From Octopus bimaculoides (taxonomy: Eukaryota): DNA of 36,643 nt. The DNA lies in the NCBI RefSeq assembly GCF_001194135.2, contig NC_068997.1, positions 7,535,241 through 7,571,883 on the forward strand, in the 5' to 3' direction. Positions 1,701 to 35,073 of this stretch are shown piece by piece (position 1 is the first letter of the stretch; every line of letters starts with the position of its first letter). The translations under genes and the position numbers were made by a program. The notes under the pieces are model-generated. The model saw nothing but the letters and a program-made list of their open reading frames with translations, made no database searches and was not told the origin of the DNA.

Positions 1701-3060
1701 TCCCCATTGAAATCCCAGTCTGAATACAAACACCACTAACTAGTGAAGGAATAAGATTCATACAACATAATTTCCTTTCCAATTCAATGACTGCACGTGC
1801 AGAAACATGTATGGGACCGCGACGGGGACGATGGTTGCTCCTACTTACGCAAATCAAGTCATTGCATCCCAAGAAATTCAGATATATCAAAGATCTAATG
1901 TATGGAATTACTTTCTCCAAATACCTATTACAATATTGGAAACGATACTTAGATGACTGCTTCATTTGTTGGAGGCAGAGTCTGGAATAATTTAATCATT
2001 CCCACGACCTAATTAATAATATGAACAACACTATTCGCTTGACAATGGAATACAGTTGCAATCAACAACCGCTTCTAAATATTTTATTAATAAGAAGGCA
2101 ATTAACATAAAAATCGACGTTTGCTACAAACTGACAGATTCTTAACAATACTTGCTTTACTCAAAACACACCAAAACAAATATACCGAGGAGTATTTCAA
2201 TCATTTCGAATTTGGAAACCCGAAATATAAAGCTCCAAGAGCTCAAATAAATATAATTTAATAGACAATACTGAGCAGTGTTAATTCATGATGAGATAGA
2301 ATGTACCAAAGTGATGGACATTGAAGAATTACGAAGGACAAAAAGCAATTTAAATACACCAAATACTCTATATAGCAACACACAACCGAAGGAATACGGT
2401 AAGATACAATATTATCCATCAAAACACGCCATCATCGGAGTAAGAGTGAACGACAAGAAATGCACTGAAAACATTCAAAATAATTAAAAGCGAAGAAGAA
2501 TCAAAACTCCGAAAGAAATTACTGACTAGTGTCAAACTGCCATCTAAAAACACAACTCCAATAGTGAAAGAGGGTGTCTTCCTTATGGAAGACACAATCT
2601 ATAATTTTAAATCAGAACATATCTTTACAGTGAAAAATAATTCTTCCTGTTCATCAAAAAATTTAATTCATGCCGTTAAGTGTAAAAGTTGTAACAAAGG
2701 CTGCAAGGGTCAAACAAAACTATCTTTGAGAACCAGACTTATTATTCATCGGCAACAAATTCGAGATCTTAATCGTAGAAAGATTCCACTGAGCGAAGTT
2801 CATAAAGTTATAACATGCGCAGACATGTGACGGACATAAACTAAAAATTGAAACCGGAAAGCATTGTTTGGAAACTATCAATAAAGTCTTTAACAAAAAG
2901 GAAACAAAAAAGCCCGAAATTTCCAAATTAAATACTGATGTGTTTTCAAGGAATGACCAACAACTTGCTTTGGACAGAGCAACTAATGGACCATTCGATA
3001 TCAGTATAATAGTAATTCTTAACATTATTTACATTTGACGGATATTTATCCTCATCTTGT
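1698..3060 (+). mobile_element. Degenerate Penelope-like retroelement (RT + thumb + GIY-YIG endonuclease), frameshifted, with stops
   Basis: Across frameshifts: RT motif B' GTATGTMVAPTYAN (1813-1854), catalytic YWKRYLDDCFICW (YLDD 1946-1957), thumb-like IDVCYKLTDS (~2110-2140), and a GIY-YIG-like block CSSKNLIHAVKCKSCNKGCKGQTKLSLRTRLIIHRQQIRD (ORF 2564-2830). RT followed by a C-terminal GIY-YIG is diagnostic of PLEs. Confidence 0.88.
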
Positions 3061-4973: not shown

Positions 4974-5395
4974 TTATTATACACCTGCCCCACCTCCTGC
5001 TCCTCCTGCTGCTCTCCCTCTTCCATCTCCTCCTCCTCTTTCACATCTCCTTCCTCCACCTTCTTCTTCTTCTTCTTCTTCTTCTTCTTCTTCTTCTTCT
5101 TCTTCTTCTTCTTCTTCTTCTTCTTCTTCTTCTTCTTCCTCCACATCTCCTTCATCTCCTTCCTCTACCTCCTTCTCTATTTTTTCTTCCTTCTCCTCCA
5201 CCTCATCACCCTCCTCCGATTCCTCCACGTCTTCTTCCTCTTCTGCCTCCACCCCTTTCTCATCCTTTCTTCCTCCTCTTTTTCTTCCTTTTCCACCTCA
5301 TCATCTTCCTTCTCTTCCTCCACCTCTTTCCCCCCTATTCCCCATCCCCCGCCTCACCACTTCCCCTTCATCATCATTCCTTTATCCTCTCTATT
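4974..5395. repeat. (CTT)n/(CCT)n pyrimidine-rich low-complexity tract
   Basis: Long perfect (CTT)n at about 5060-5137 within degenerate CCT/CTT repeats; source of the poly-K/E/L ORFs. Confidence 0.95.
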
Positions 5396-9300: not shown

Positions 9301-10165
9301 ACACAGCTGGAAGGAAATTATTCGTCATAATGACAAGTATTTCAAGTCTAAAGTATTTATCGAGAAATTTCTTATCTAAAATAAGTTCATTATTTAAGAT
9401 ATTGTTGCTGGCATTTCAGTTAATATCTTTGGAATATTTCGAAAGAACCAATCTTCGGTAATTACATTAAAGGCTAGACGAATTTTGAGAAATATCTGAA
9501 TGCGACTATAAAATTTCATGAAGTATATATTTCCATTACAATTATTTTACATACATACATACACACACATACACACACACGGGGGAATATGTATGTGCGT
9601 AGACAAACACATCCACCCTACCACGCAAAGCTGCCATCGCAATACGATTGATTTAACAGATATATACTTGCGACATACGCACAAACAATTCGACACGTAC
9701 ATAATCACACAGACGCACACACAGACACACAGACACAGACACACAGACACAGACATACAGACACACACACACAGATAAGTCTACACTTTCCTACACACTG
9801 ATGTATACGTTCACACTAATACACACACAAGCAATGTTCTACTACACGTCGCCCCTAATCCTTCTGCGGTCGTTGAATACCACCCAAGGTCGGCCCGTTA
9901 CTTTCAATCGGTCCATGACAACGATGTAAACTAACGACACACTTGGGCATTCCTACTGGACTTTTCCTTTCTATTGTTGATAGTTTTTTTCTTTTTCTCT
10001 TTCCGCTTAGAGTTTGTATTCCATATAACACAATGTCCGGAGCATCATAATCAGCTCCTCCCACTCTTGCAAGTAGCAACATAGGAATTTTGTGTTTGTA
10101 GCCTTGAGAGAACCTCTCTTATGAGCACTTGGTGCATAAAACACACACACGAAACATAATAGACG

Positions 10166-10267
10166 AGATTCATCTGTTATGGGTGCCGGAACTCCCATAT
10201 CACATAATTTCAGTCTACTAGACATCATCAGTGGGAGGCGTCCTGTCACCGCATAACAGACAAATCT
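10166..10267 (-). ncRNA. Type I hammerhead ribozyme (HHR-1) at the tip of a long hairpin
   Basis: Minus strand: CUCCCA-CUGAUGA-U[GUCU agu AGAC]U-GAAA-UUAUGUGA-UA-UGGGAG (core 10192-10237). Perfect 6-bp stem I, 4-bp stem II, self-complementary stem III, AUA cleavage triplet (cut between 10198 and 10197). Stem I extends via GGUG/CACC and a 16-bp helix AGAUUUGUCUGUUAUG/CAUAACAGAUGAAUCU. Confidence 0.85.
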
Positions 10268-10565
10268 TGTTGTCACGATATATTGGATATTTGTATCTTT
10301 TCAGACACTGATGTTGCAAAAAGCCAGCAGGCTTATCAAAAATCAATTATTAGCGACGGAAGCTGTACTAGTAGCAAATGGCAATATTTATACCAAACGT
10401 AACGTAGATGTCTTGCTAGAACACCGAATACTTCGTTATTAGCCGCCGTGAGAGAGCCTCTCACACAGGCATTTGGTGTATAAAGTACACACATAGATAA
10501 TAGCAAACGAGAACCGCCTGCTAACCAGTGTCTGAAAAAAGCTGATATTCTGTTTATCATAGCAG

Positions 10566-10671
10566 CGAGATTTGCCTGTTGTGCGTCGACCGGATGCCTT
10601 CCACTGATGATGCCCAGTAAACTGAAATCATGTGATATGGAAGTTCGCGTGACCATAACAGATGGTTCTCG
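10566..10671 (+). ncRNA. Type I hammerhead ribozyme (HHR-2), paralog of HHR-1, stem II damaged
   Basis: CUUCCA-CUGAUGA-UGCCCAGUAAACU-GAAA-UCAUGUGA-UA-UGGAAG (core 10598-10643). Stem I is perfect; stem III AUCAUGUGAU is palindromic with G-U pairs; stem II keeps only one good pair. Confidence 0.75.
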
Positions 10672-11499
10672 TTTGCTACTCGTTTGTTATTGCTGTTGTC
10701 ATTGCCGTTGCAACTGTTGCTGCTGTTGTTCTTCTTGTTGTAGTTGCCGTTCCAACTGTACCATGGAAGCTAATAGGTCTTCCATGCTAAGAACATCCAC
10801 AGCGAGCTTCAAATGTCTCGTCACCACTCTTATATCTTTGCGTTTGGATATAGACTACACTGTAACAGTGTTATAACACTACAAACACTAAATCAGTAAT
10901 GAACACCTAACAAACTTATATCTCTTCTCAACGACTTCTACGACTGCCTTCACAAATGCGACTGCACACACCACACTGTACCTCGCACTGTCAGTACGTA
11001 TGTACCTTTATAAGGTTTAGAACAGTTCACTTGCTATCCCACAGAGATGTCAGGATTTCACCATAACACAGATGAAGAAGCAAGCAATATTTATTCTAGT
11101 TGCAAAGAAACACAAACAGGTTTTAAGACATTGGAGTACATAAAAAGTGAGCGTGTGAACCGCTCTGGTATCGGAGTCAGAGACGCTCAACAAAAATAGA
11201 GATGGTGTAAGCTTCTTTACAAACAAGTCTTGTAGAATGAAACTAGAGTTTGTTCAAATATGCCCACTCAATGTACGACATGAGAAAAATAATAAAACAA
11301 AATCACGACAACGTCGCTAAACTTTTTATATCTATATCAAAATGTGGTGTAACTTCGTTCATCCAATATGGCGACATACTGCAAACGACTTCCGGATCAT
11401 AAGCAATGGCACACGTCAGTGAATGAAGGCGTGTTATGGGCCCTAGGATTCACAAGGCCGGAAAATGACTCAGTTTCTGTGATTGAGATGACAACACAC

Positions 11500-14404: not shown

Positions 14405-14736
14405 TGTGGAGTAGACATGCGCGGAAAGTTGTTGCTATAGCAACCGGTTGGCTTCCTGTAACTCTCTTCTGTTGTTGATAGTTGGTTTCCTTTGGAGTAC
14501 AAGGATGGCCTCGGAGATTCTAAGGCTGCTCCTGTTGTGCTGCGTTGCCTTACGAATATGCCACACCCGGGAATTCACAGTGTACATCAGGGCAACACAG
14601 CGCAATAGGGGCAACCTTAGAATTTCCGAGTCCATCCTTTTACACCGAAGGTAACCTACAATGAACAACAAGAAGAGAGTTACAGGAAGCTAGCTGGTTG
14701 CTATAGCAACAACTTTCCGCGCATGTCTACTCCACA
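14405..14736. mobile_element. Fold-back / MITE-like element, 145-146-bp inverted arms around a 41-nt spacer
   Basis: Left arm 14405-14549 vs reverse complement of 14591-14736: first 41 bp identical, 17 substitutions and 1 indel in total (~88%). It sits in TG/CA/TA microsatellite with no clear TSD. Confidence 0.85.
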
Positions 14737-21777: not shown

Positions 21778-22410
21778 CTCCAAGGATCAGCTGAAAAGTT
21801 CATAGGATGATCAAACGACTCTCATAAAAGGAGACTGGATGAGGTTTACTTTTCAACAAAGTCCGCATTGCGGTCCACACACGTTTCCTATCAGTGTTTC
21901 AGTGCTTGGATCCTATTGGTGATTGCTCATCATGTTGGTCAATAAGTCATCAACAGCCGGTATGACGTCATCGTCACTGCGTTACGGGTTCCCAGCCAAA
22001 CGTTTATTTATGCTGGGAACAGATGGTAGTCAGACGGGGCCAAATCAGGGGAATATGGAGGGTGATCAACCAGCTCAAAGCCACAGTTACACACAGCGAC
22101 CATTAATACAAAGGACTTGTATGCAGGTGAATTGTCCTGAAGGAACAAGACCCTTTTGTCAGTTTTCTTGACCGTTTAGTTTCTTCATAAACTTTTGCAA
22201 TTGCCTCCGCTAAATTGCACAGTACTCTCCATTGATGGCGTGGCCTTTTGGAAGGTAGTCAATAAACACAATGCCTTTTGCATCCTAGAAAACTGAGGCC
22301 ACCACCTTCCCTCCAGATGAAACGACCTTGGCCTTCTTTGGAGCAGATGAGCAAGGGTGTCTTTTTGTCTCTGGTTCAAAGTGTTGACCGCAACACTCAG
22401 CCTGGCTGGT
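21778..22410 (-). mobile_element. Mariner (DD34D) remnant, 5'-truncated, with 3' TIR
   Basis: Minus strand reads DAKGIVFIDYLPKGHAINGEY, QDNSPAYKS...CGFELVDHPPYS(fs)DLAPSDYHLFP. Spacing is 34 residues between QD and PSD after correcting a 1-bp frameshift. TIR-like CTCCAAGGATCAGCTGAAAAGTTCATAGG at 21778-21806. Confidence 0.9.
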
Positions 22411-22772
22411 GCGCTCCTGATCCGGTTTCTTCTTGATCCGGTTTCTGTCACCATTTGTAGACATAGGATTTGAATTCCCTTAAATATTAACATAATTTAC
22501 AAAAAAAAAAAAAAAAGAAAAAGAAAAGAAAGCAATCTTGCAAAGTTCTACATGTCCATCCTTAGTTCAACTGTCTTATTTCTGCCTCGGTAAGAAACCT
22601 TTGTTACATTCAATAATGATAAACAGAAAGCAGCAATTGTAGATTGCTTCCCCCAATGCCTTGCATGGTTGTTACGTTTCTTTATCTTCTCAGTTTTAGT
22701 TTTGTAGAGAATAACTCTTTTTATTCCTCTTCTGTAGGTGAGAGAATTAATTCCTCTGGAATTAACTCAGTC

Positions 22773-24905: not shown

Positions 24906-25747
24906 TTGTGAACCGAAAGCCCTATACTCGAGATTGCTCCAATATGGCCAGACCCAAGGAAAAACTAAGCTAAGAGCACAAGATTCCTTGGAAGAAAGCA
25001 GCGAATGTATAAAAAAACAAAGACGGAAAAAAAAGGAGAAATGTTACACCAATACAAATGCAAATAAAGGACATTAACAGCAGGTGTCTTTCGACTAATG
25101 ACGAATTAAATTAAGCTGGTATGCGTGGAAGTGAAGCCTTACGGCAGGGACATAAGAGATGACAGGCATGGGGAGGAATACAGATGTTGTACGGATGGTA
25201 GTCGAACCAAGAAAGAAAGGTCAGTCTTGGCTGAACACCGGTCACACGCGGAGAGAGAAGAGAGAGAGAGAGGGGCAGAGACAGAGGGATAGAAGAATTA
25301 GGGAGGGACGAGAAAAGAAGAAAAAAGAAAAAAAGAATATATATATATATATATATATATANNNNNNNNNNNNNNNNNNNNNNNNNNNNNNNNNNNNNNN
25401 NNNNNNNNNNNNNNNNNNNNNNNNNNNNNNNNNNNNNNNNNNNNNNNNNNNNNNNNNNNNNNNNNNNNNNNNNNNNNNNNNNNNNNNNNNNNNNNNNNNN
25501 NNNNNNNNNNNNNNNNNNNNNNNNNNNNNNNNNNNNNNNNNNNNNNNNNNNNNNNNNNNNNNNNNNNNNNNNNNNNNNNNNNNNNNNNNNNNNNNNNNNN
25601 NNNNNNNNNNNNNNNNNNNNNNNNNNNNNNNNNNNNNNNNNNNNNNNNNNNNNNNNNNNNNNNNNNNNNNNNNNNNNNNNNNNNNNNNNNNNNNNNNNNN
25701 NNNNNNNNNNNNNNNNNNNNNNNNNNNNNNNNNNNNNNNNNNNNNNN

Positions 25748-25801
<54 letters not shown>

Positions 25802-27194
25802 CGCACACACGTTCGCACGCACACGTACTCTCATGGCTTCAACATGCAAGGGAGTGTTATGGCCTGTCTCAAACACAGAATAACTTATTCCAATATTATC
25901 CCAATAAATTCCATATAAAATTCGTTCTGTTTGGTTTTAATTTCTTCCTTCGTTCCCCTGTCCTTGCACCTGACACCATTTTCGTGGAAGGGAAGAAAGG
26001 AAGGCAGCACAATGTCACACAAACAGATGTTGAATTAATTTATTAGTGCGCTTGTTAATTTTGCTGTAGTTGCTGTTGTCCATAATGACAATGATGATGA
26101 TGATGGTGTTGGTGGTGGTGGTGGTGGTGTTGGTAGTTGTGCTATGTTTATTTTTAGCATTTTTCAAGATAATTTTTCTCACCATCTTCAACCTCCTCCA
26201 CAAAACATTGATTTTTTTACAATAATTGTTTCATTTAAGTGAGGAACATTTGCATGGGAAATAGTGACGAGAAAAACAACAAATAAATGCTCAACAAGAA
26301 CAAGAACAACAACAAAAACAACAACAGCAACAACAACAACAACAATAATAATCGTAATGTTTTCAAATTTTGGTACTGTTATTTCGGGGAAAGGGTTAAG
26401 TCAGTNNNNNNNNNNNNNNNNNNNNNNNNNNNNNNNNNNNNNNNNNNNNNNNNNNNNNNNNNNNNNNNNNNNNNNNNNNNNNNNNNNNNNNNNNNNNNNN
26501 NNNNNNNNNNNNNNNNNNNNNNNNNNNNNNNNNNNNNNNNNNNNNNNNNNNNNNNNNNNNNNNNNNNNNNNNNNNNNNNNNNNNNNNNNNNNNNNNNNNN
26601 NNNNNNNNNNNNNNNNNNNNNNNNNNNNNNNNNNNNNNNNNNNNNNNNNNNNNNNNNNNNNNNNNNNNNNNNNNNNNNNNNNNNNNNNNNNNNNNNNNNN
26701 NNNNNNNNNNNNNNNNNNNNNNNNNNNNNNNNNNNNNNNNNNNNNNNNNNNNNNNNNNNNNNNNNNNNNNNNNNNNNNNNNNNNNNNNNNNNNNNNNNNN
26801 NNNNNNNNNNNNNNNNNNNNNNNNNNNNNNNNNNNNNNNNNNNNNNNNNNNNNNNNNNNNNNNNNNNNNNNNNNNNNNNNNNNNNNNNNNNNNNNNNNNN
26901 NNNNNNNNNNNNNNNNNNNNNNNNNNNNNNNNNNNNNNNNNNNNNNNNNNNNNNNNNNNNNNNNNNNNNNNNNNNNNNNNNNNNNNNNNNNNNNNNNNNN
27001 NNNNNNNNNNNNNNNNNNNNNNNNNNNNNNNNNNNNNNNNNNNNNNNNNNNNNNNNNNNNNNNNNNNNNNNNNNNNNNNNNNNNNNNNNNNNNNNNNNNN
27101 NNNNNNNNNNNNNNNNNNNNNNNNNNNNNNNNNNNNNNNNNNNNNNNNNNNNNNNNNNNNNNNNNNNNNNNNNNNNNNNNNNNNNNNNNNNNNN

Positions 27195-27253
<59 letters not shown>

Positions 27254-27643
27254 TAAATAACAGCAACAATGAATGTATTCCCTTATGTATATGTGTGTCG
27301 ATGTGTACAATGTGTGTGCGTGTGTGTGTGTGTGTGTGTATGTGTGTGTGTATATATATATGTGCAGAGTGTAGGTGCTTGTATGTGTGCGTATGCTTGA
27401 CTGTATGTGGCAGCCAACCCAGACAGAATTCCAATTAGTGTCGCAGGGGTGGGTAGGAGAACGAATGGGGTGGGCGCAATATGGAGACGAATACTCATGG
27501 GTGGCTGAGCAGGATTAGAACAACACTGCGATTATCACAACTACCATCATCATCATCATCATCACCATCATCACCACCACCACCACCACCACNNNNNNNN
27601 NNACAACAACAGCAACAACAACAACAACAATAATAATCGTAAT

Positions 27644-27847
27644 GTTTTCAAATTTTGGTACTGTTATTTCGGGGAAAGGGTTAAGTCAGTCTGTCCCAGT
27701 GTGAAAATGGTACTTATTTATCGACCCTCGAAAGGGATGAAAGTCAAAGTCGACCCCGGCGGCATTTGAACTCAGAATGTAAAGACAGATGAAATGCCGC
27801 TAAGCATCTTCTCCGGTGTGCTAACGGTTCTGCCACCTCGCCGCCTT
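27644..27847 (-). mobile_element. tRNA-derived SINE, well preserved (first of a tandem pair)
   Basis: Head AAGGCGGCGAGGTGGCAGAACCGTTAGCACACCGG and B-box GAGTTCAAATGCC; colinear with 27863-28077. Confidence 0.9.
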
Positions 27848-27862
27848 GATAATAACAATAAT

Positions 27863-28077
27863 GGTTTCAAGTGTTGCCACAAGGGCAGCAATTTTGGTGG
27901 AGGGGGATGAGTTGATTAAATCGACTCCAGTGTACAACTGGTACTTATTTTAACGATCCCGGAAGGATGAAAGGCAATGTCGACCTCAGCGGAATTTGAA
28001 CTCAGAACGTAGCGACGGGCGAAATACCACTAAGCATTTCGTCCAGTCTGCAAACAGTTCTGCCAGTTCGCCGCCTT
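27863..28077 (-). mobile_element. tRNA-derived SINE, well preserved (second of a tandem pair)
   Basis: Head AAGGCGGCGAACTGGCAGAACTG and B-box GAGTTCAAATTCC; abuts (AAT)n. Confidence 0.9.
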
Positions 28078-28078
<1 letters not shown>

Positions 28079-28136
<58 letters not shown>

Positions 28137-28201
28137 TAATAATAATAATGATAATAATAATAATAATAATGATAATAATAATAATGATAATAATTATAGT
28201 A

Positions 28202-28248
<47 letters not shown>
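28079..28248. repeat. (AAT)n/(GAT)n microsatellite running into a gap
   Basis: Directly visible; a similar (AAT)n lies at 27195-27250. Confidence 0.97.
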
Positions 28249-29110
28249 NNNNNNNNNNNNNNNNNNNNNNNNNNNNNNNNNNNNNNNNNNNNNNNNNNNN
28301 NNNNNNNNNNNNNNNNNNNNNNNNNNNNNNNNNNNNNNNNNNNNNNNNNNNNNNNNNNNNNNNNNNNNNNNNNNNNNNNNNNNNNNNNNNNNNNNNNNNN
28401 NNNNNNNNNNNNNNNNNNNNNNNNNNNNNNNNNNNNNNNNNNNNNNNNNNNNNNNNNNNNNNNNNNNNNNNNNNNNNNNNNNNNNNNNNNNNNNNNNNNN
28501 NNNNNNNNNNNNNNNNNNNNNNNNNNNNNNNNNNNNNNNNNNNNNNNNNNNNNNNNNNNNNNNNNNNNNNNNNNNNNNNNNNNNNNNNNNNNNNNNNNNN
28601 NNNNNNNNNNNNNNNNNNNNNNNNNNNNNNNNNNNNNNNNNNNNNNNNNNNNNNNNNNNNNNNNNNNNNNNNNNNNNNNNNNNNNNNNNNNNNNNNNNNN
28701 NNNNNNNNNNNNNNNNNNNNNNNNNNNNNNNNNNNNNNNNNNNNNNNNNNNNNNNNNNNNNNNNNNNNNNNNNNNNNNNNNNNNNNNNNNNNNNNNNNNN
28801 NNNNNNNNNNNNNNNNNNNNNNNNNNNNNNNNNNNNNNNNNNNNNNNNNNNNNNNNNNNNNNNNNNNNNNNNNNNNNNNNNNNNNNNNNNNNNNNNNNNN
28901 NNNNNNNNNNNNNNNNNNNNNNNNNNNNNNNNNNNNNNNNNNNNNNNNNNNNNNNNNNNNNNNNNNNNNNNNNNNNNNNNNNNNNNNNNNNNNNNNNNNN
29001 NNNNNNNNNNNNNNNNNNNNNNNNNNNNNNNNNNNNNNNNNNNNNNNNNNNNNNNNNNNNNNNNNNNNNNNNNNAGTAATTTCCCTTTGTTTAACAGTCA
29101 TTTTCATTGG

Positions 29111-29203
29111 AATTTTCAATGGCCAGATAACTGAAGAAATGGCGGTGTGGGTTTCCGGCCCGGCATCTGAAACTCGGAGTTTTATCATGGCTACTGAATA
29201 ATT
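29111..29203 (+). ncRNA. Type I hammerhead motif (HHR-4), unrelated in sequence to HHR-1/2
   Basis: UGGCCA-GAUAA-CUGAAGA-A[AUGGCGG...CCGGCAU]CU-GAAA-CUCGGAG-UU-UUAUC-A-UGGCUA (core 29131-29181). Stem I has 11 bp with one bulge plus a UUCA/UGAA extension; stem III is the palindrome ACUCGGAGU; triplet GUU. Confidence 0.7.
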
Positions 29204-29520
29204 GTCACATATTTTTACAGATATATATATATAAACAAATAATAAATGAGTATATGCATATATACGTACAGGTGTGTGCATACCTACGTCTACCTGTATA
29301 TATAGGTGAATATCTGGGTACAGGACATTGCAAACAAAACGTAGACAAGAAATAATAATAACCAGAGTACAGAAAACACACAAGCCACATAGAGAACATT
29401 TTCCTTCATCAGCTACCCCCGTTTTAACACCGGCGCACAAACACATATACAAATGTGTGGTAATGAACTTGTGAAAGCGATATACATTATACGTATATGT
29501 CTACGTGTGTAGACATATAT

Positions 29521-34841: not shown

Positions 34842-34862
34842 TTATTATTATTATTATTATTT

Positions 34863-34906
<44 letters not shown>

Positions 34907-35073
34907 ATTTATTGCTATTATCATTTCCGTATTACCATTTATATATCATTATCGTTTCTTGTCCAGTTATTTAATTGTAGATTTCTACATAAATACGGCT
35001 CTGCCAGTAAAGAACAATCACACACCACCACCACCACCACTACCACCACCACTACCACCACCACCACCACCAC
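34842..35073. repeat. (TTA)n, (GTT)n and (CAC)n microsatellites
   Basis: Directly visible: (GTT)n ~34862-34905, (CAC)n ~35022-35073. Confidence 0.95.

What the first reader, a model, noticed from the sequence alone, without database searches (positions are those of the whole stretch)
10166..10671. Pair of type I hammerhead ribozymes with three compensatory base-pair changes
Seen: two copies about three-quarters identical by eye (minus 10166-10267, plus 10566-10671) share the core CUGAUGA...GAAA...UA and a long stem I. Pairing is preserved by double substitutions: CUCCCA/UGGGAG becomes CUUCCA/UGGAAG (C-G to U-A), and GGUG/CACC becomes GUCG/UGAC (G-C to U-A, U-A to C-G). A bulged C, an internal loop 6 bp from the core and loop-II AGU are conserved. 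Known: in natural hammerheads the stem I internal loop contacts loop II, and palindromic stem III allows dimeric cleavage in Penelope and retrozyme hammerheads. Inference: this is a structurally selected, possibly uncatalogued ribozyme family; HHR-1 is the likelier active copy. The U-U juxtaposition at the base of stem II is atypical.
Basis: partly seen in the sequence, partly recalled or inferred. Interest (0 to 1): 0.85.

Follow-up and report, generated by a model that had tools for sequence, protein, structure and literature searches.

The report
Hammerhead ribozyme in retroelement-type repeat
The site holds one intact-looking and one decayed copy of a small self-cutting RNA (a type I hammerhead ribozyme) carried by a short mobile repeat in an animal-like genome; such ribozymes are already well known in animals, so this is a new example, not a new kind.

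Summary
10163-10310 and 10526-10672 are an inverted repeat (148 nt, 78% identity). Both arms carry every invariant hammerhead core base and a long helix I, and three base pairs of helix I change on both sides while still pairing.

Only the minus-strand copy (HHR-1, minimal motif 10237-10192) has all three helices. HHR-2 has lost 3 of 4 helix II pairs.

Rfam reports no hammerhead, even at E<=10. A covariance model built only from four published, experimentally self-cleaving animal retrozyme hammerheads finds exactly these two sites in the window (31.6 bits, E 5e-7; 22.8 bits, E 2e-4; next best 10.9 bits).

The closest relative is axolotl HHR_Amex2. It has the same U.U at the base of helix II, so that "atypical" feature has a published precedent.

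The opposite-strand arrangement looks like a by-product of insertion. Un-inverting 10526-10663 makes unit 2 colinear with unit 1 over 215 nt, and a 15-23 nt inverted duplication marks the breakpoint. This is the partial-tandem plus inverted 5'-truncated layout described for Penelope-like retroelement insertions.

Verdict: a new member of a known kind, probably a fossil locus; low to moderate interest. No further copies could be retrieved and the source organism was not identified.

The parts
10096..10310 (-). Repeat unit 1, sense on the minus strand: 5' extension, hammerhead hairpin, linker, 'A' tail. It folds as a quasi-rod.
   Evidence: Colinear with un-inverted unit 2 over 215 nt, 74% identity, one gap. 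MFE -66.1 kcal/mol, z -3.9.
10163..10270 (-). HHR-1 with its extended helix I: about 32 bp interrupted by a bulged C and a 3x1 internal loop 6 bp from the core.
   Evidence: Fold z -5.25; pair table.
10192..10237 (-). HHR-1 minimal type I hammerhead: CUCCCA / CUGAUGA / U.GUCU-AGU-AGAC.U / GAAA / helix III AUU-AUGU-GAU / A17 / UGGGAG.
   Evidence: Model R2 31.6 bits, E 4.6e-7, full-length match. It is the only descriptor hit in the window, and 0 of 300 shuffles are as good.
10197..10198 (-). Predicted self-cleavage site of HHR-1: 3' of A17 (10198), 5' of U1.1 (10197).
   Evidence: Inferred from hammerhead numbering on the alignment; not tested.
10101..10149 (+). 'A' segment of unit 1, which is the 3' tail of the element in minus sense. 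It is a direct repeat of 10445-10493.
   Evidence: 77.6% identity over 49 nt.
10440..10523 (-). Unit 2, 3'-terminal fragment in the same (minus) orientation as unit 1: 'A' segment 10445-10493 plus the junction and the last 15-23 nt of the hammerhead hairpin.
   Evidence: The start-to-start distance from A1 to A2 is 344 bp.
10526..10678 (+). Unit 2, inverted 5' part (extension plus hammerhead hairpin), now sense on the plus strand.
   Evidence: Inverted repeat with 10163-10310. Un-inverting it restores colinearity with unit 1.
10598..10643 (+). HHR-2: core, helix I and helix III are kept, but helix II is lost (GCCC/AAAC, 3 C.A mismatches). The predicted site would be 10637/10638.
   Evidence: R2 22.8 bits, E 1.8e-4, with non-pairs flagged in helix II; pair table. 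The hammerhead-compatible fold is 7.3 kcal/mol above the MFE.
10656..10678 (+). Inverted duplication at the inversion breakpoint, partner 10501-10523. The first 15 nt are identical and the rest differ by 3 transitions.
   Evidence: Inverted repeat I10, 23 nt, 87% complementary.
9541..9830 (.). Flanking CA/ACAG-type microsatellite tract. A GTT/GCT-type tract lies on the other side at 10684-10752.
   Evidence: Repeat families D1 and D4. Penelope-like elements are reported to insert preferentially in microsatellites (PMC8557442).

Best explanation
The locus is a remnant of a short, non-coding, hammerhead-bearing retroelement of the animal retrozyme / Penelope-like pseudo-LTR kind.

Layout, reading the minus strand 5' to 3':
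- an inverted 5'-truncated copy (10678-10526)
- a short sense 3' fragment (10523-10440)
- a 134-nt stretch
- a complete sense unit (10310-10096)

This is a partial tandem with a 344-bp period plus an adjacent inverted truncated copy. The two hammerheads therefore face each other because of how the element inserted, not because they act as a pair.

HHR-1 is a complete type I hammerhead ribozyme. A minus-strand transcript would fold helix I (6 bp, an internal loop, then about 26 more bp), helix II (U.U plus 4 bp, loop AGU) and a weak helix III (A-U, U-A, U.G, loop AUGU). The 2'-OH of A17 (10198) would attack the next phosphate, leaving a 2',3'-cyclic phosphate and a 5'-OH at U10197.

Helix III is weak and quasi-palindromic. 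Efficient cutting would therefore probably need two sense copies pairing into a 10-bp intermolecular helix III, as shown for amphibian hammerheads. This locus now offers only one sense copy per strand. HHR-2 is a decayed copy.

Shown: the sequence anatomy, the similarity to active hammerheads, and the colinearity after un-inversion. Inferred: retroposition as the origin, cleavage, and dimer dependence.
For: - Core and helices: all 13 invariant core positions are present in both copies, and helices I, II and III are correctly placed in HHR-1.
- Model R2, built only from four experimentally self-cleaving coral, mussel and axolotl retrozyme hammerheads (sequences from the supplement of PMC7229834; alignment), finds HHR-1 at 31.6 bits (E 4.6e-7) and HHR-2 at 22.8 bits (E 1.8e-4). 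These are the only significant hits in 36.6 kb; the next best is 10.9 bits. A 15-kb unrelated Penelope-like contig gives nothing.
- blastn aligns the axolotl Ax353 hammerhead with both copies at 80-85% over 39-40 nt, E 2e-4 and 5e-3, as its best hits in the window.
[quoted passage not shown] It self-cleaves 22% in 1 h as a monomer and much more efficiently in dimeric constructs.
- 0 of 300 shuffled windows give an equally good motif.
- Helix I keeps 94-100% of its pairs across copies, with 3 double and 4 wobble-preserving single changes.
- The whole unit folds as a quasi-rod, z -3.9.
- Un-inverted unit 2 is colinear with unit 1, with a 15-23 nt inverted duplication at the breakpoint.
- The literature matches the arrangement: dual hammerheads 100-700 bp apart on opposite strands in Schistosoma (PMC4209133); partial tandems with an adjacent inverted 5'-truncated copy and a microsatellite insertion bias in Penelope-like elements (PMC8557442).
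- A decayed Penelope-like RT/GIY-YIG remnant lies in the same window at about 1771-2830.
Against: - Rfam 15 reports no hammerhead family at gathering score, nor at E<=10 on 1 kb or on 66 nt.
- U.U replaces the usual G10.1-C11.1 pair.
- Helix III is very weak. Its self-duplex is only -4.2 kcal/mol, against -10 to -13 for the validated ribozymes, and it forms no stable monomer hairpin.
- The MFE fold of HHR-1 sequesters UGAUGA and is 2.3 kcal/mol better than the active fold.
- HHR-2 shows decay of helix II, not compensation.
- There are only two copies. No others were found in metagenome contigs or in the protein database via pseudo-ORFs.
- No RT/endonuclease ORF adjoins the units, and the Penelope-like remnant 7 kb away shares no sequence with them.
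- Sequences selected only for the core pattern already score 10-19 bits with R2, so HHR-2's 22.8 bits is mostly core plus helix I.
Confidence: 0.72

Rival explanations
1. Chance hammerhead look-alike inside a hairpin-forming repeat, such as a foldback element, a MITE with 148-nt terminal inverted repeats (10163-10672), or a miRNA-like hairpin. On this reading the long stem is what is conserved, and the core match is coincidental and non-catalytic.
For: All compensatory changes lie in the long helix I, none in helix II or III. No Rfam hammerhead hit was found. The loose descriptor hits about 10% of shuffled windows. Core-pattern matches alone reach 19 bits. Another very strong unrelated hairpin exists at 14502-14640.
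Against: - A motif as complete as HHR-1 occurred in 0 of 300 shuffles.
- The core lies exactly at the tip of helix I, with the internal loop at 6 bp and a 4-bp helix II, as in canonical animal hammerheads (PMC4209133).
- There is 80-85% sequence similarity to a biochemically validated ribozyme.
- The 'A' segments are direct repeats, one outside and one inside the supposed terminal repeats. A MITE does not explain this, but an inversion does.
Confidence: 0.12
2. The inverted pair works as a unit. Read-through transcription gives a long imperfect hairpin RNA (arms 148 nt) that feeds small-RNA pathways, and the hammerhead sequences are incidental.
For: The MFE fold of 10163-10672 on either strand pairs arm with arm: 122-125 inter-arm pairs, -228 to -234 kcal/mol.
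Against: The arms are only 78% complementary. Any inverted repeat folds this way. The layout is explained by insertion mechanics (PMC8557442). No expression evidence is available.
Confidence: 0.08
3. A C/D-box snoRNA-like RNA, in which UGAUGA is box C, CUGA is box D, and CCCA/UGGG is a terminal stem.
For: A weak SNORD66 match, 13.1 bits, E 1.
Against: The score is far below the gathering score of 32. The boxes are only about 12 nt apart, which leaves no room for a guide. The match skips 20 nt of sequence against 52 model positions. The hammerhead core shares these letters by nature.
Confidence: 0.02

Closest known systems
Axolotl HHR_Amex2 (retrozyme Rtz_353 / Ax353; Cervera and de la Pena 2020, PMC7229834)
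   Same: Type I hammerhead. CUGAUGA is followed by a U.U mismatch at the base of helix II. The cleavage context is UA|UGGG. Helix I is 6 bp, and helix III is short with a palindromic tetraloop. Identity is 80-85% over 39-40 nt.
   Different: - Helix II is GUCU/AGAC with a 3-nt loop, instead of GCC/GGC with a 5-nt loop.
- Helix III is 3 bp with G.U pairs and is much weaker in a dimer (-4.2 versus -10.3 kcal/mol).
- There is no similarity outside the ribozyme.
- It is not found here in a tandem array.
Mussel (Mytilus galloprovincialis) retrozyme hammerhead, Mg353 (PMC7229834)
   Same: Identical helix II stem GUCU/AGAC, a 6-bp helix I, and a repeat unit of about 350 bp. The period here is 344 bp.
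   Different: The mussel motif has no U.U layer, cuts after GUC, and has a GC-rich palindromic helix III.
Hammerheads in pseudo-LTRs of Penelope-like elements (Cervera and De la Pena 2014, PMC4209133; Craig et al. 2021, PMC8557442)
   Same: The hammerhead sits near the 3' end of a retroelement repeat. Pairs on opposite strands 100-700 bp apart are reported. So are partial-tandem plus inverted 5'-truncated insertion structures, and insertion in microsatellites.
   Different: Penelope-like hammerheads are mostly 'minimal': no helix III, a long helix II and a short helix I. The motif here is the canonical form, and no RT/GIY-YIG ORF adjoins it.
Schistosoma Sm-alpha SINE-like hammerhead and newt satellite 2 hammerhead (from my own knowledge and the reviews cited in PMC4209133)
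   Same: A type I hammerhead carried by a short non-coding dispersed or tandem repeat in an animal genome. Dimer-dependent cleavage occurs when helix III is short.
   Different: Those have G10.1-C11.1 and the conserved loop 1 / loop 2 contact nucleotides. The repeat sequences are unrelated.

Membership tests
Hammerhead ribozyme, type I | Invariant core C3 U4 G5 A6 N7 G8 A9 / G12 A13 A14 / A15.1-U16.1 / H17 (not G) | tested here: met
   All positions are present and identical in both copies.
Hammerhead ribozyme, type I | Three helices around the core, with helix I open-ended and helices II and III capped by loops | tested here: met
   HHR-1 has helix I 6 bp plus extension, helix II 4 bp, and helix III 3 bp. 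HHR-2 fails on helix II, with 3 of 4 pairs broken.
Hammerhead ribozyme, type I | G10.1-C11.1 pair closing helix II | tested here: not met
   U.U in both copies. Published precedent in active HHR_Amex2 (PMC7229834).
Hammerhead ribozyme, type I | Match to Rfam hammerhead covariance models (Hammerhead_1, _3, _II, HH9, HH10) at gathering score | tested here: not met
   No hammerhead match at gathering score, nor at E<=10 on 1051 nt or 66 nt. The reason was not determined.
Hammerhead ribozyme, type I | Match to a covariance model of experimentally active metazoan type I hammerheads | tested here: met
   R2 (4 sequences from PMC7229834): HHR-1 31.6 bits, E 4.6e-7; HHR-2 22.8 bits, E 1.8e-4; background at most 10.9 bits. 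Controls.
Hammerhead ribozyme, type I | Loop 1 / loop 2 tertiary contact | tested here: inconclusive
   An internal loop lies 6 bp from the core and a 3-nt loop II is conserved. The canonical contact nucleotides cannot be assigned from two sequences.
Hammerhead ribozyme, type I | Site-specific self-cleavage giving a 2',3'-cyclic phosphate and a 5'-OH | not testable with these tools
   Needs in vitro transcription.
Metazoan non-LTR retrozyme | Tandem direct repeats of about 170-400 bp, each with a sense type I hammerhead | tested here: not met
   There is only a 344-bp period with about 1.2 direct units. The upstream unit lacks a sense hammerhead, and the second hammerhead is inverted. This may be a degraded array.
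Metazoan non-LTR retrozyme | Non-coding, highly self-paired RNA | tested here: met
   Quasi-rod fold, z -3.9. ORFs over the units have no Pfam family above cut-off and no homologues.
Metazoan non-LTR retrozyme | Expressed as circular RNA | not testable with these tools
   No transcript data are available.
Penelope-like element pseudo-LTR | The repeat flanks an RT plus GIY-YIG ORF | tested here: not met
   There is no such ORF within 5 kb. The decayed remnant at about 1771-2830 shares no sequence with the units.
Penelope-like element pseudo-LTR | Partial tandem plus adjacent inverted 5'-truncated copy, with insertion in microsatellite | tested here: met
   compared with PMC8557442.
C/D box snoRNA | Score at or above the Rfam gathering threshold, with a guide region between the boxes | tested here: not met
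   SNORD66 13.1 bits against 32; the boxes are about 12 nt apart.

The most novel reading that the evidence does not exclude
The 215-344 nt unit could be the first seen copy of an undescribed, still-active family of solo or SINE-like hammerhead elements in this unidentified animal. Its ribozyme would be of the U.U (Amex2-like) class, otherwise documented here only from axolotl, and would sit at the tip of an unusually long (over 30 bp) helix I. This would be a class that the current Rfam hammerhead models do not detect and that may therefore be systematically under-annotated.
Probability: 0.2. Interest if true: 0.4.

Novelty: new member of a known kind. Interest (0 to 1): 0.25.

Why it matters
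It adds one more locus to the very large set of hammerhead ribozymes carried by animal retroelements. Two points have modest practical value. First, a canonical-looking hammerhead with the U.U variant escaped the Rfam scan completely, which suggests this sub-class is under-annotated. Second, the locus shows a clear case of a hammerhead pair on opposite strands that arises from an inverted 5'-truncated insertion and not from function. It does not open a new question.

Tried and rejected
- Rfam at gathering score and at E<=10 on three region sizes gave no hammerhead, only noise and a weak SNORD66 look-alike.
- Two scans of metagenome contigs were run with family-specific patterns. The first gave 0 hits. 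The second gave 4 hits, about what I estimated chance would give for that pattern. They look like coding sequence, have no proper helices, and score 9.6-19.3 bits with R2.
- I used the open pseudo-ORF across HHR-1 as a protein query to fish out other genomic copies; there was no candidate. The ORFs are not coding: 12 of 37 residues differ between the copies, with no Pfam match above cut-off.
- A full-text search for the ribozyme sequence strings in papers found none.
- Exact-product look-ups of two window ORFs, tried to learn the source record, found nothing on record. The organism therefore remains unidentified.
- A model of the whole 113-nt hairpin (R1) searched over the window found no further copies, only unrelated palindromes at 357-453 and 14516-14623.
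- A search for homology between the 134-nt spacer and the flanks found none above shuffled controls.
- The contig of a distant Penelope-like relative (L005) has no canonical hammerhead.
- The MITE reading was rejected because the 'A' segments are direct repeats, not inverted.
- The dimer cofold of the full hairpins is a trivial strand swap and says nothing.

Full report
**Setting.** The window is a eukaryotic draft scaffold. It has eleven runs of N, abundant CA/TATG-type microsatellites, about 33% G+C, no tRNA genes and no long credible ORFs. It carries decayed mobile elements: a Penelope-like RT/GIY-YIG remnant at about 1771-2830 and a weak mariner-type DDE remnant at about 22011-22175. I could not identify the organism.

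- The repeat finder and blastn show an inverted repeat, 10163-10310 versus 10672-10526, 148 nt at 77.7% identity.
- Over the 113-nt hairpin the two copies align without gaps and differ at 23 columns.
- Both carry CUGAUGA, GAAA and UA at hammerhead spacing, and all 13 core positions are identical.
- In the minus-strand copy the motif reads CUCCCA-CUGAUGA-U-GUCU-AGU-AGAC-U-GAAA-UUAUGUGAU-A|UGGGAG. Helix I is 6 bp, followed by a 3x1 internal loop and about 26 more pairs with a bulged C. Helix II is 4 bp above a U.U. Helix III is A-U, U-A, U.G with loop AUGU.
- In the plus-strand copy three of the four helix II pairs have become C.A mismatches. Its hammerhead-compatible fold is 7.3 kcal/mol worse than its MFE. 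Only HHR-1 is a complete hammerhead.

**Is it more than chance?**
- A simple descriptor (helix I at least 4 bp, helix II at least 3 bp allowing a 10.1/11.1 mismatch, helix III at least 1 bp) finds only HHR-1 in the window. About 10% of 300 dinucleotide shuffles give some loose hit, and none gives one as good as HHR-1.
- The covariation is modest. Three or more compensatory pairs arise by chance with P about 0.02-0.03 in my simulation. The column-shuffle control reaches the observed value in 55 of 500 shuffles.
- The covariation speaks only for the long helix I, not for the catalytic fold.

No hammerhead family appears at gathering score, or at E<=10 on 1051 nt or on 66 nt. The only hit over the motif is a 13-bit SNORD66 look-alike, which reflects the letters UGAUGA/CUGA that hammerhead cores share with C/D boxes.

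**An independent membership test is positive.**
- The supplement of Cervera and de la Pena 2020 (PMC7229834) prints four retrozyme constructs whose hammerheads self-cleave in vitro: coral Amil224, mussel Mg353, and axolotl Ax353 and Ax330.
- I built a 44-position covariance model from those four motifs alone and searched the whole window with filters off.
- It returned HHR-1 at 31.6 bits (E 4.6e-7) and HHR-2 at 22.8 bits (E 1.8e-4), both full-length. The next best was 10.9 bits.
- Controls: a 15-kb unrelated Penelope-like contig gives nothing. Four metagenome sequences that I had selected only for the core pattern score 9.6-19.3 bits. HHR-1 therefore gains about 12 bits from its helices, while HHR-2 is little more than core plus helix I.
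- E-values from this short calibration are rough, and they would be far weaker on a genome-wide scale.

**Closest relative.**
- blastn aligns the Ax353 hammerhead (HHR_Amex2) with both copies at 80-85% over 39-40 nt, as its best hits in the window.
[quoted passage not shown] It self-cleaves 22% in one hour as a monomer and much better in dimeric constructs.
- The helix II stem GUCU/AGAC is identical to that of the mussel retrozyme hammerhead.
- The general anatomy (helix I of 6 bp, helix II of 4 bp, a short helix III with a palindromic loop) is the 'canonical metazoan type I' form defined in PMC4209133.

**Likely activity.**
- Helix III does not form a stable monomer hairpin. Its self-duplex of 10 pairs, four of them G.U, is only -4.2 kcal/mol in HHR-1, against -10 to -13 for the validated ribozymes.
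- The MFE fold of HHR-1 also competes with the active fold by 2.3 kcal/mol.
- I therefore expect weak cleavage at best as a monomer and dependence on a second sense copy. This is inference.

**What carries the ribozyme.**
- Besides the inverted arms there is a direct repeat 'A' (10101-10149 and 10445-10493, 77.6%) and a 23-nt inverted duplication (10501-10523 / 10656-10678, first 15 nt identical).
- If 10526-10663 is turned around and joined to 10440-10515, unit 2 becomes colinear with unit 1 (10096-10310) over 215 nt, with one 1-nt gap and 74% identity.
- Read on the minus strand the locus is: inverted 5'-truncated copy, short sense 3' fragment, 134 nt, complete sense unit. The direct period is 344 bp.
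- No homology was found between the 134-nt stretch and the outer flanks.
- The unit folds as a quasi-rod (z -3.9). Microsatellites flank the locus on both sides.
- This is the structure that Craig et al. describe for Penelope-like insertions: partial tandems with an adjacent inverted 5'-truncated copy, and a microsatellite insertion bias (PMC8557442).
- Cervera and De la Pena noted dual hammerheads 100-700 bp apart on opposite strands (PMC4209133).
- The 344-bp period is in the retrozyme size range (PMC7229834).
- I therefore read the opposite-strand pair as a by-product of target-primed reverse transcription, not as a functional pair. That origin is inferred, not shown.

**Rivals.**
- A chance look-alike in a hairpin repeat or MITE is disfavoured by the completeness of HHR-1, by its similarity to an active ribozyme, and by the direct orientation of the 'A' segments.
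- A long hairpin RNA from read-through transcription is what the fold program predicts for the 510-nt region. Any inverted repeat does this, and the arms are only 78% complementary.
- The snoRNA reading fails on score and spacing.

**Limits.** No further copies could be found, so family-wide covariation, copy number and association with an autonomous element remain untested.

**Verdict.** This is a genuine hammerhead-family locus: one intact-looking type I motif of the U.U (Amex2-like) sub-class plus one decayed copy, in a retroelement-type partial-tandem/inverted insertion. It is a new member of a known kind, of low to moderate interest.

Noticed in passing
window 1771-2830 (+): Decayed, frameshifted Penelope-like element remnant. 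It has RT-like motifs by eye (GTATGTMVAPTYAN, RYLDDCF) followed by a GIY-YIG-like region. A conceptual translation hits two database proteins carrying PF01541 (GIY-YIG) and PF26215 at E 1.6e-15 and 8e-13. No hammerhead was detected downstream of it, and it shares no sequence with the hammerhead units.
   Followed up: partly
window 14502-14640: Very strong imperfect palindrome of about 140 nt (RNA fold -87.8 kcal/mol, z -12), G+C about 0.5 in an AT-rich region. It has no hammerhead core and no Rfam match. It may be a foldback element, a MITE or a hairpin-RNA locus.
   Followed up: partly
window 22011-22496 (-): Mariner-type transposase remnant. The segment 22011-22175 reads ...DHPPYSPDLAPSDYHLF... 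and gives a weak Pfam DDE_3 match (17 bits, below cut-off). The adjoining 22188-22496 segment gave only a weak match to an unrelated domain of unknown function.
   Followed up: partly
window 10684-10752, also 26292-26351 and 34854-34909: GTT/GCT-type trinucleotide tracts (Gln/Asn-rich if read on the minus strand). One directly abuts the end of unit 2, and similar tracts recur elsewhere in the window.
   Followed up: no
window 25000-29500: Block of very low G+C (about 19-23%) broken by large assembly gaps (N runs of 386, 789 and 826 nt). The apparent long ORFs there are artefacts of N runs and simple sequence.
   Followed up: no
window 4980-5297 (-): Open frame of low complexity dominated by a long Glu run (GAA/GAG repeat) next to an assembly gap. 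It is probably a simple repeat and not an exon.
   Followed up: no
L005 (ENA contig ctg15400, 4190-7102 + and 9092-12025 -): A metagenome-derived eukaryotic contig with two copies of a gene set in mirror-image orientation. One gene in each copy hits PF26215 (HTH_animal) and is distantly related to the window's Penelope-like remnant. The layout illustrates the inverted insertion structures reported for these elements. The type I hammerhead model gave no hit there.
   Followed up: partly
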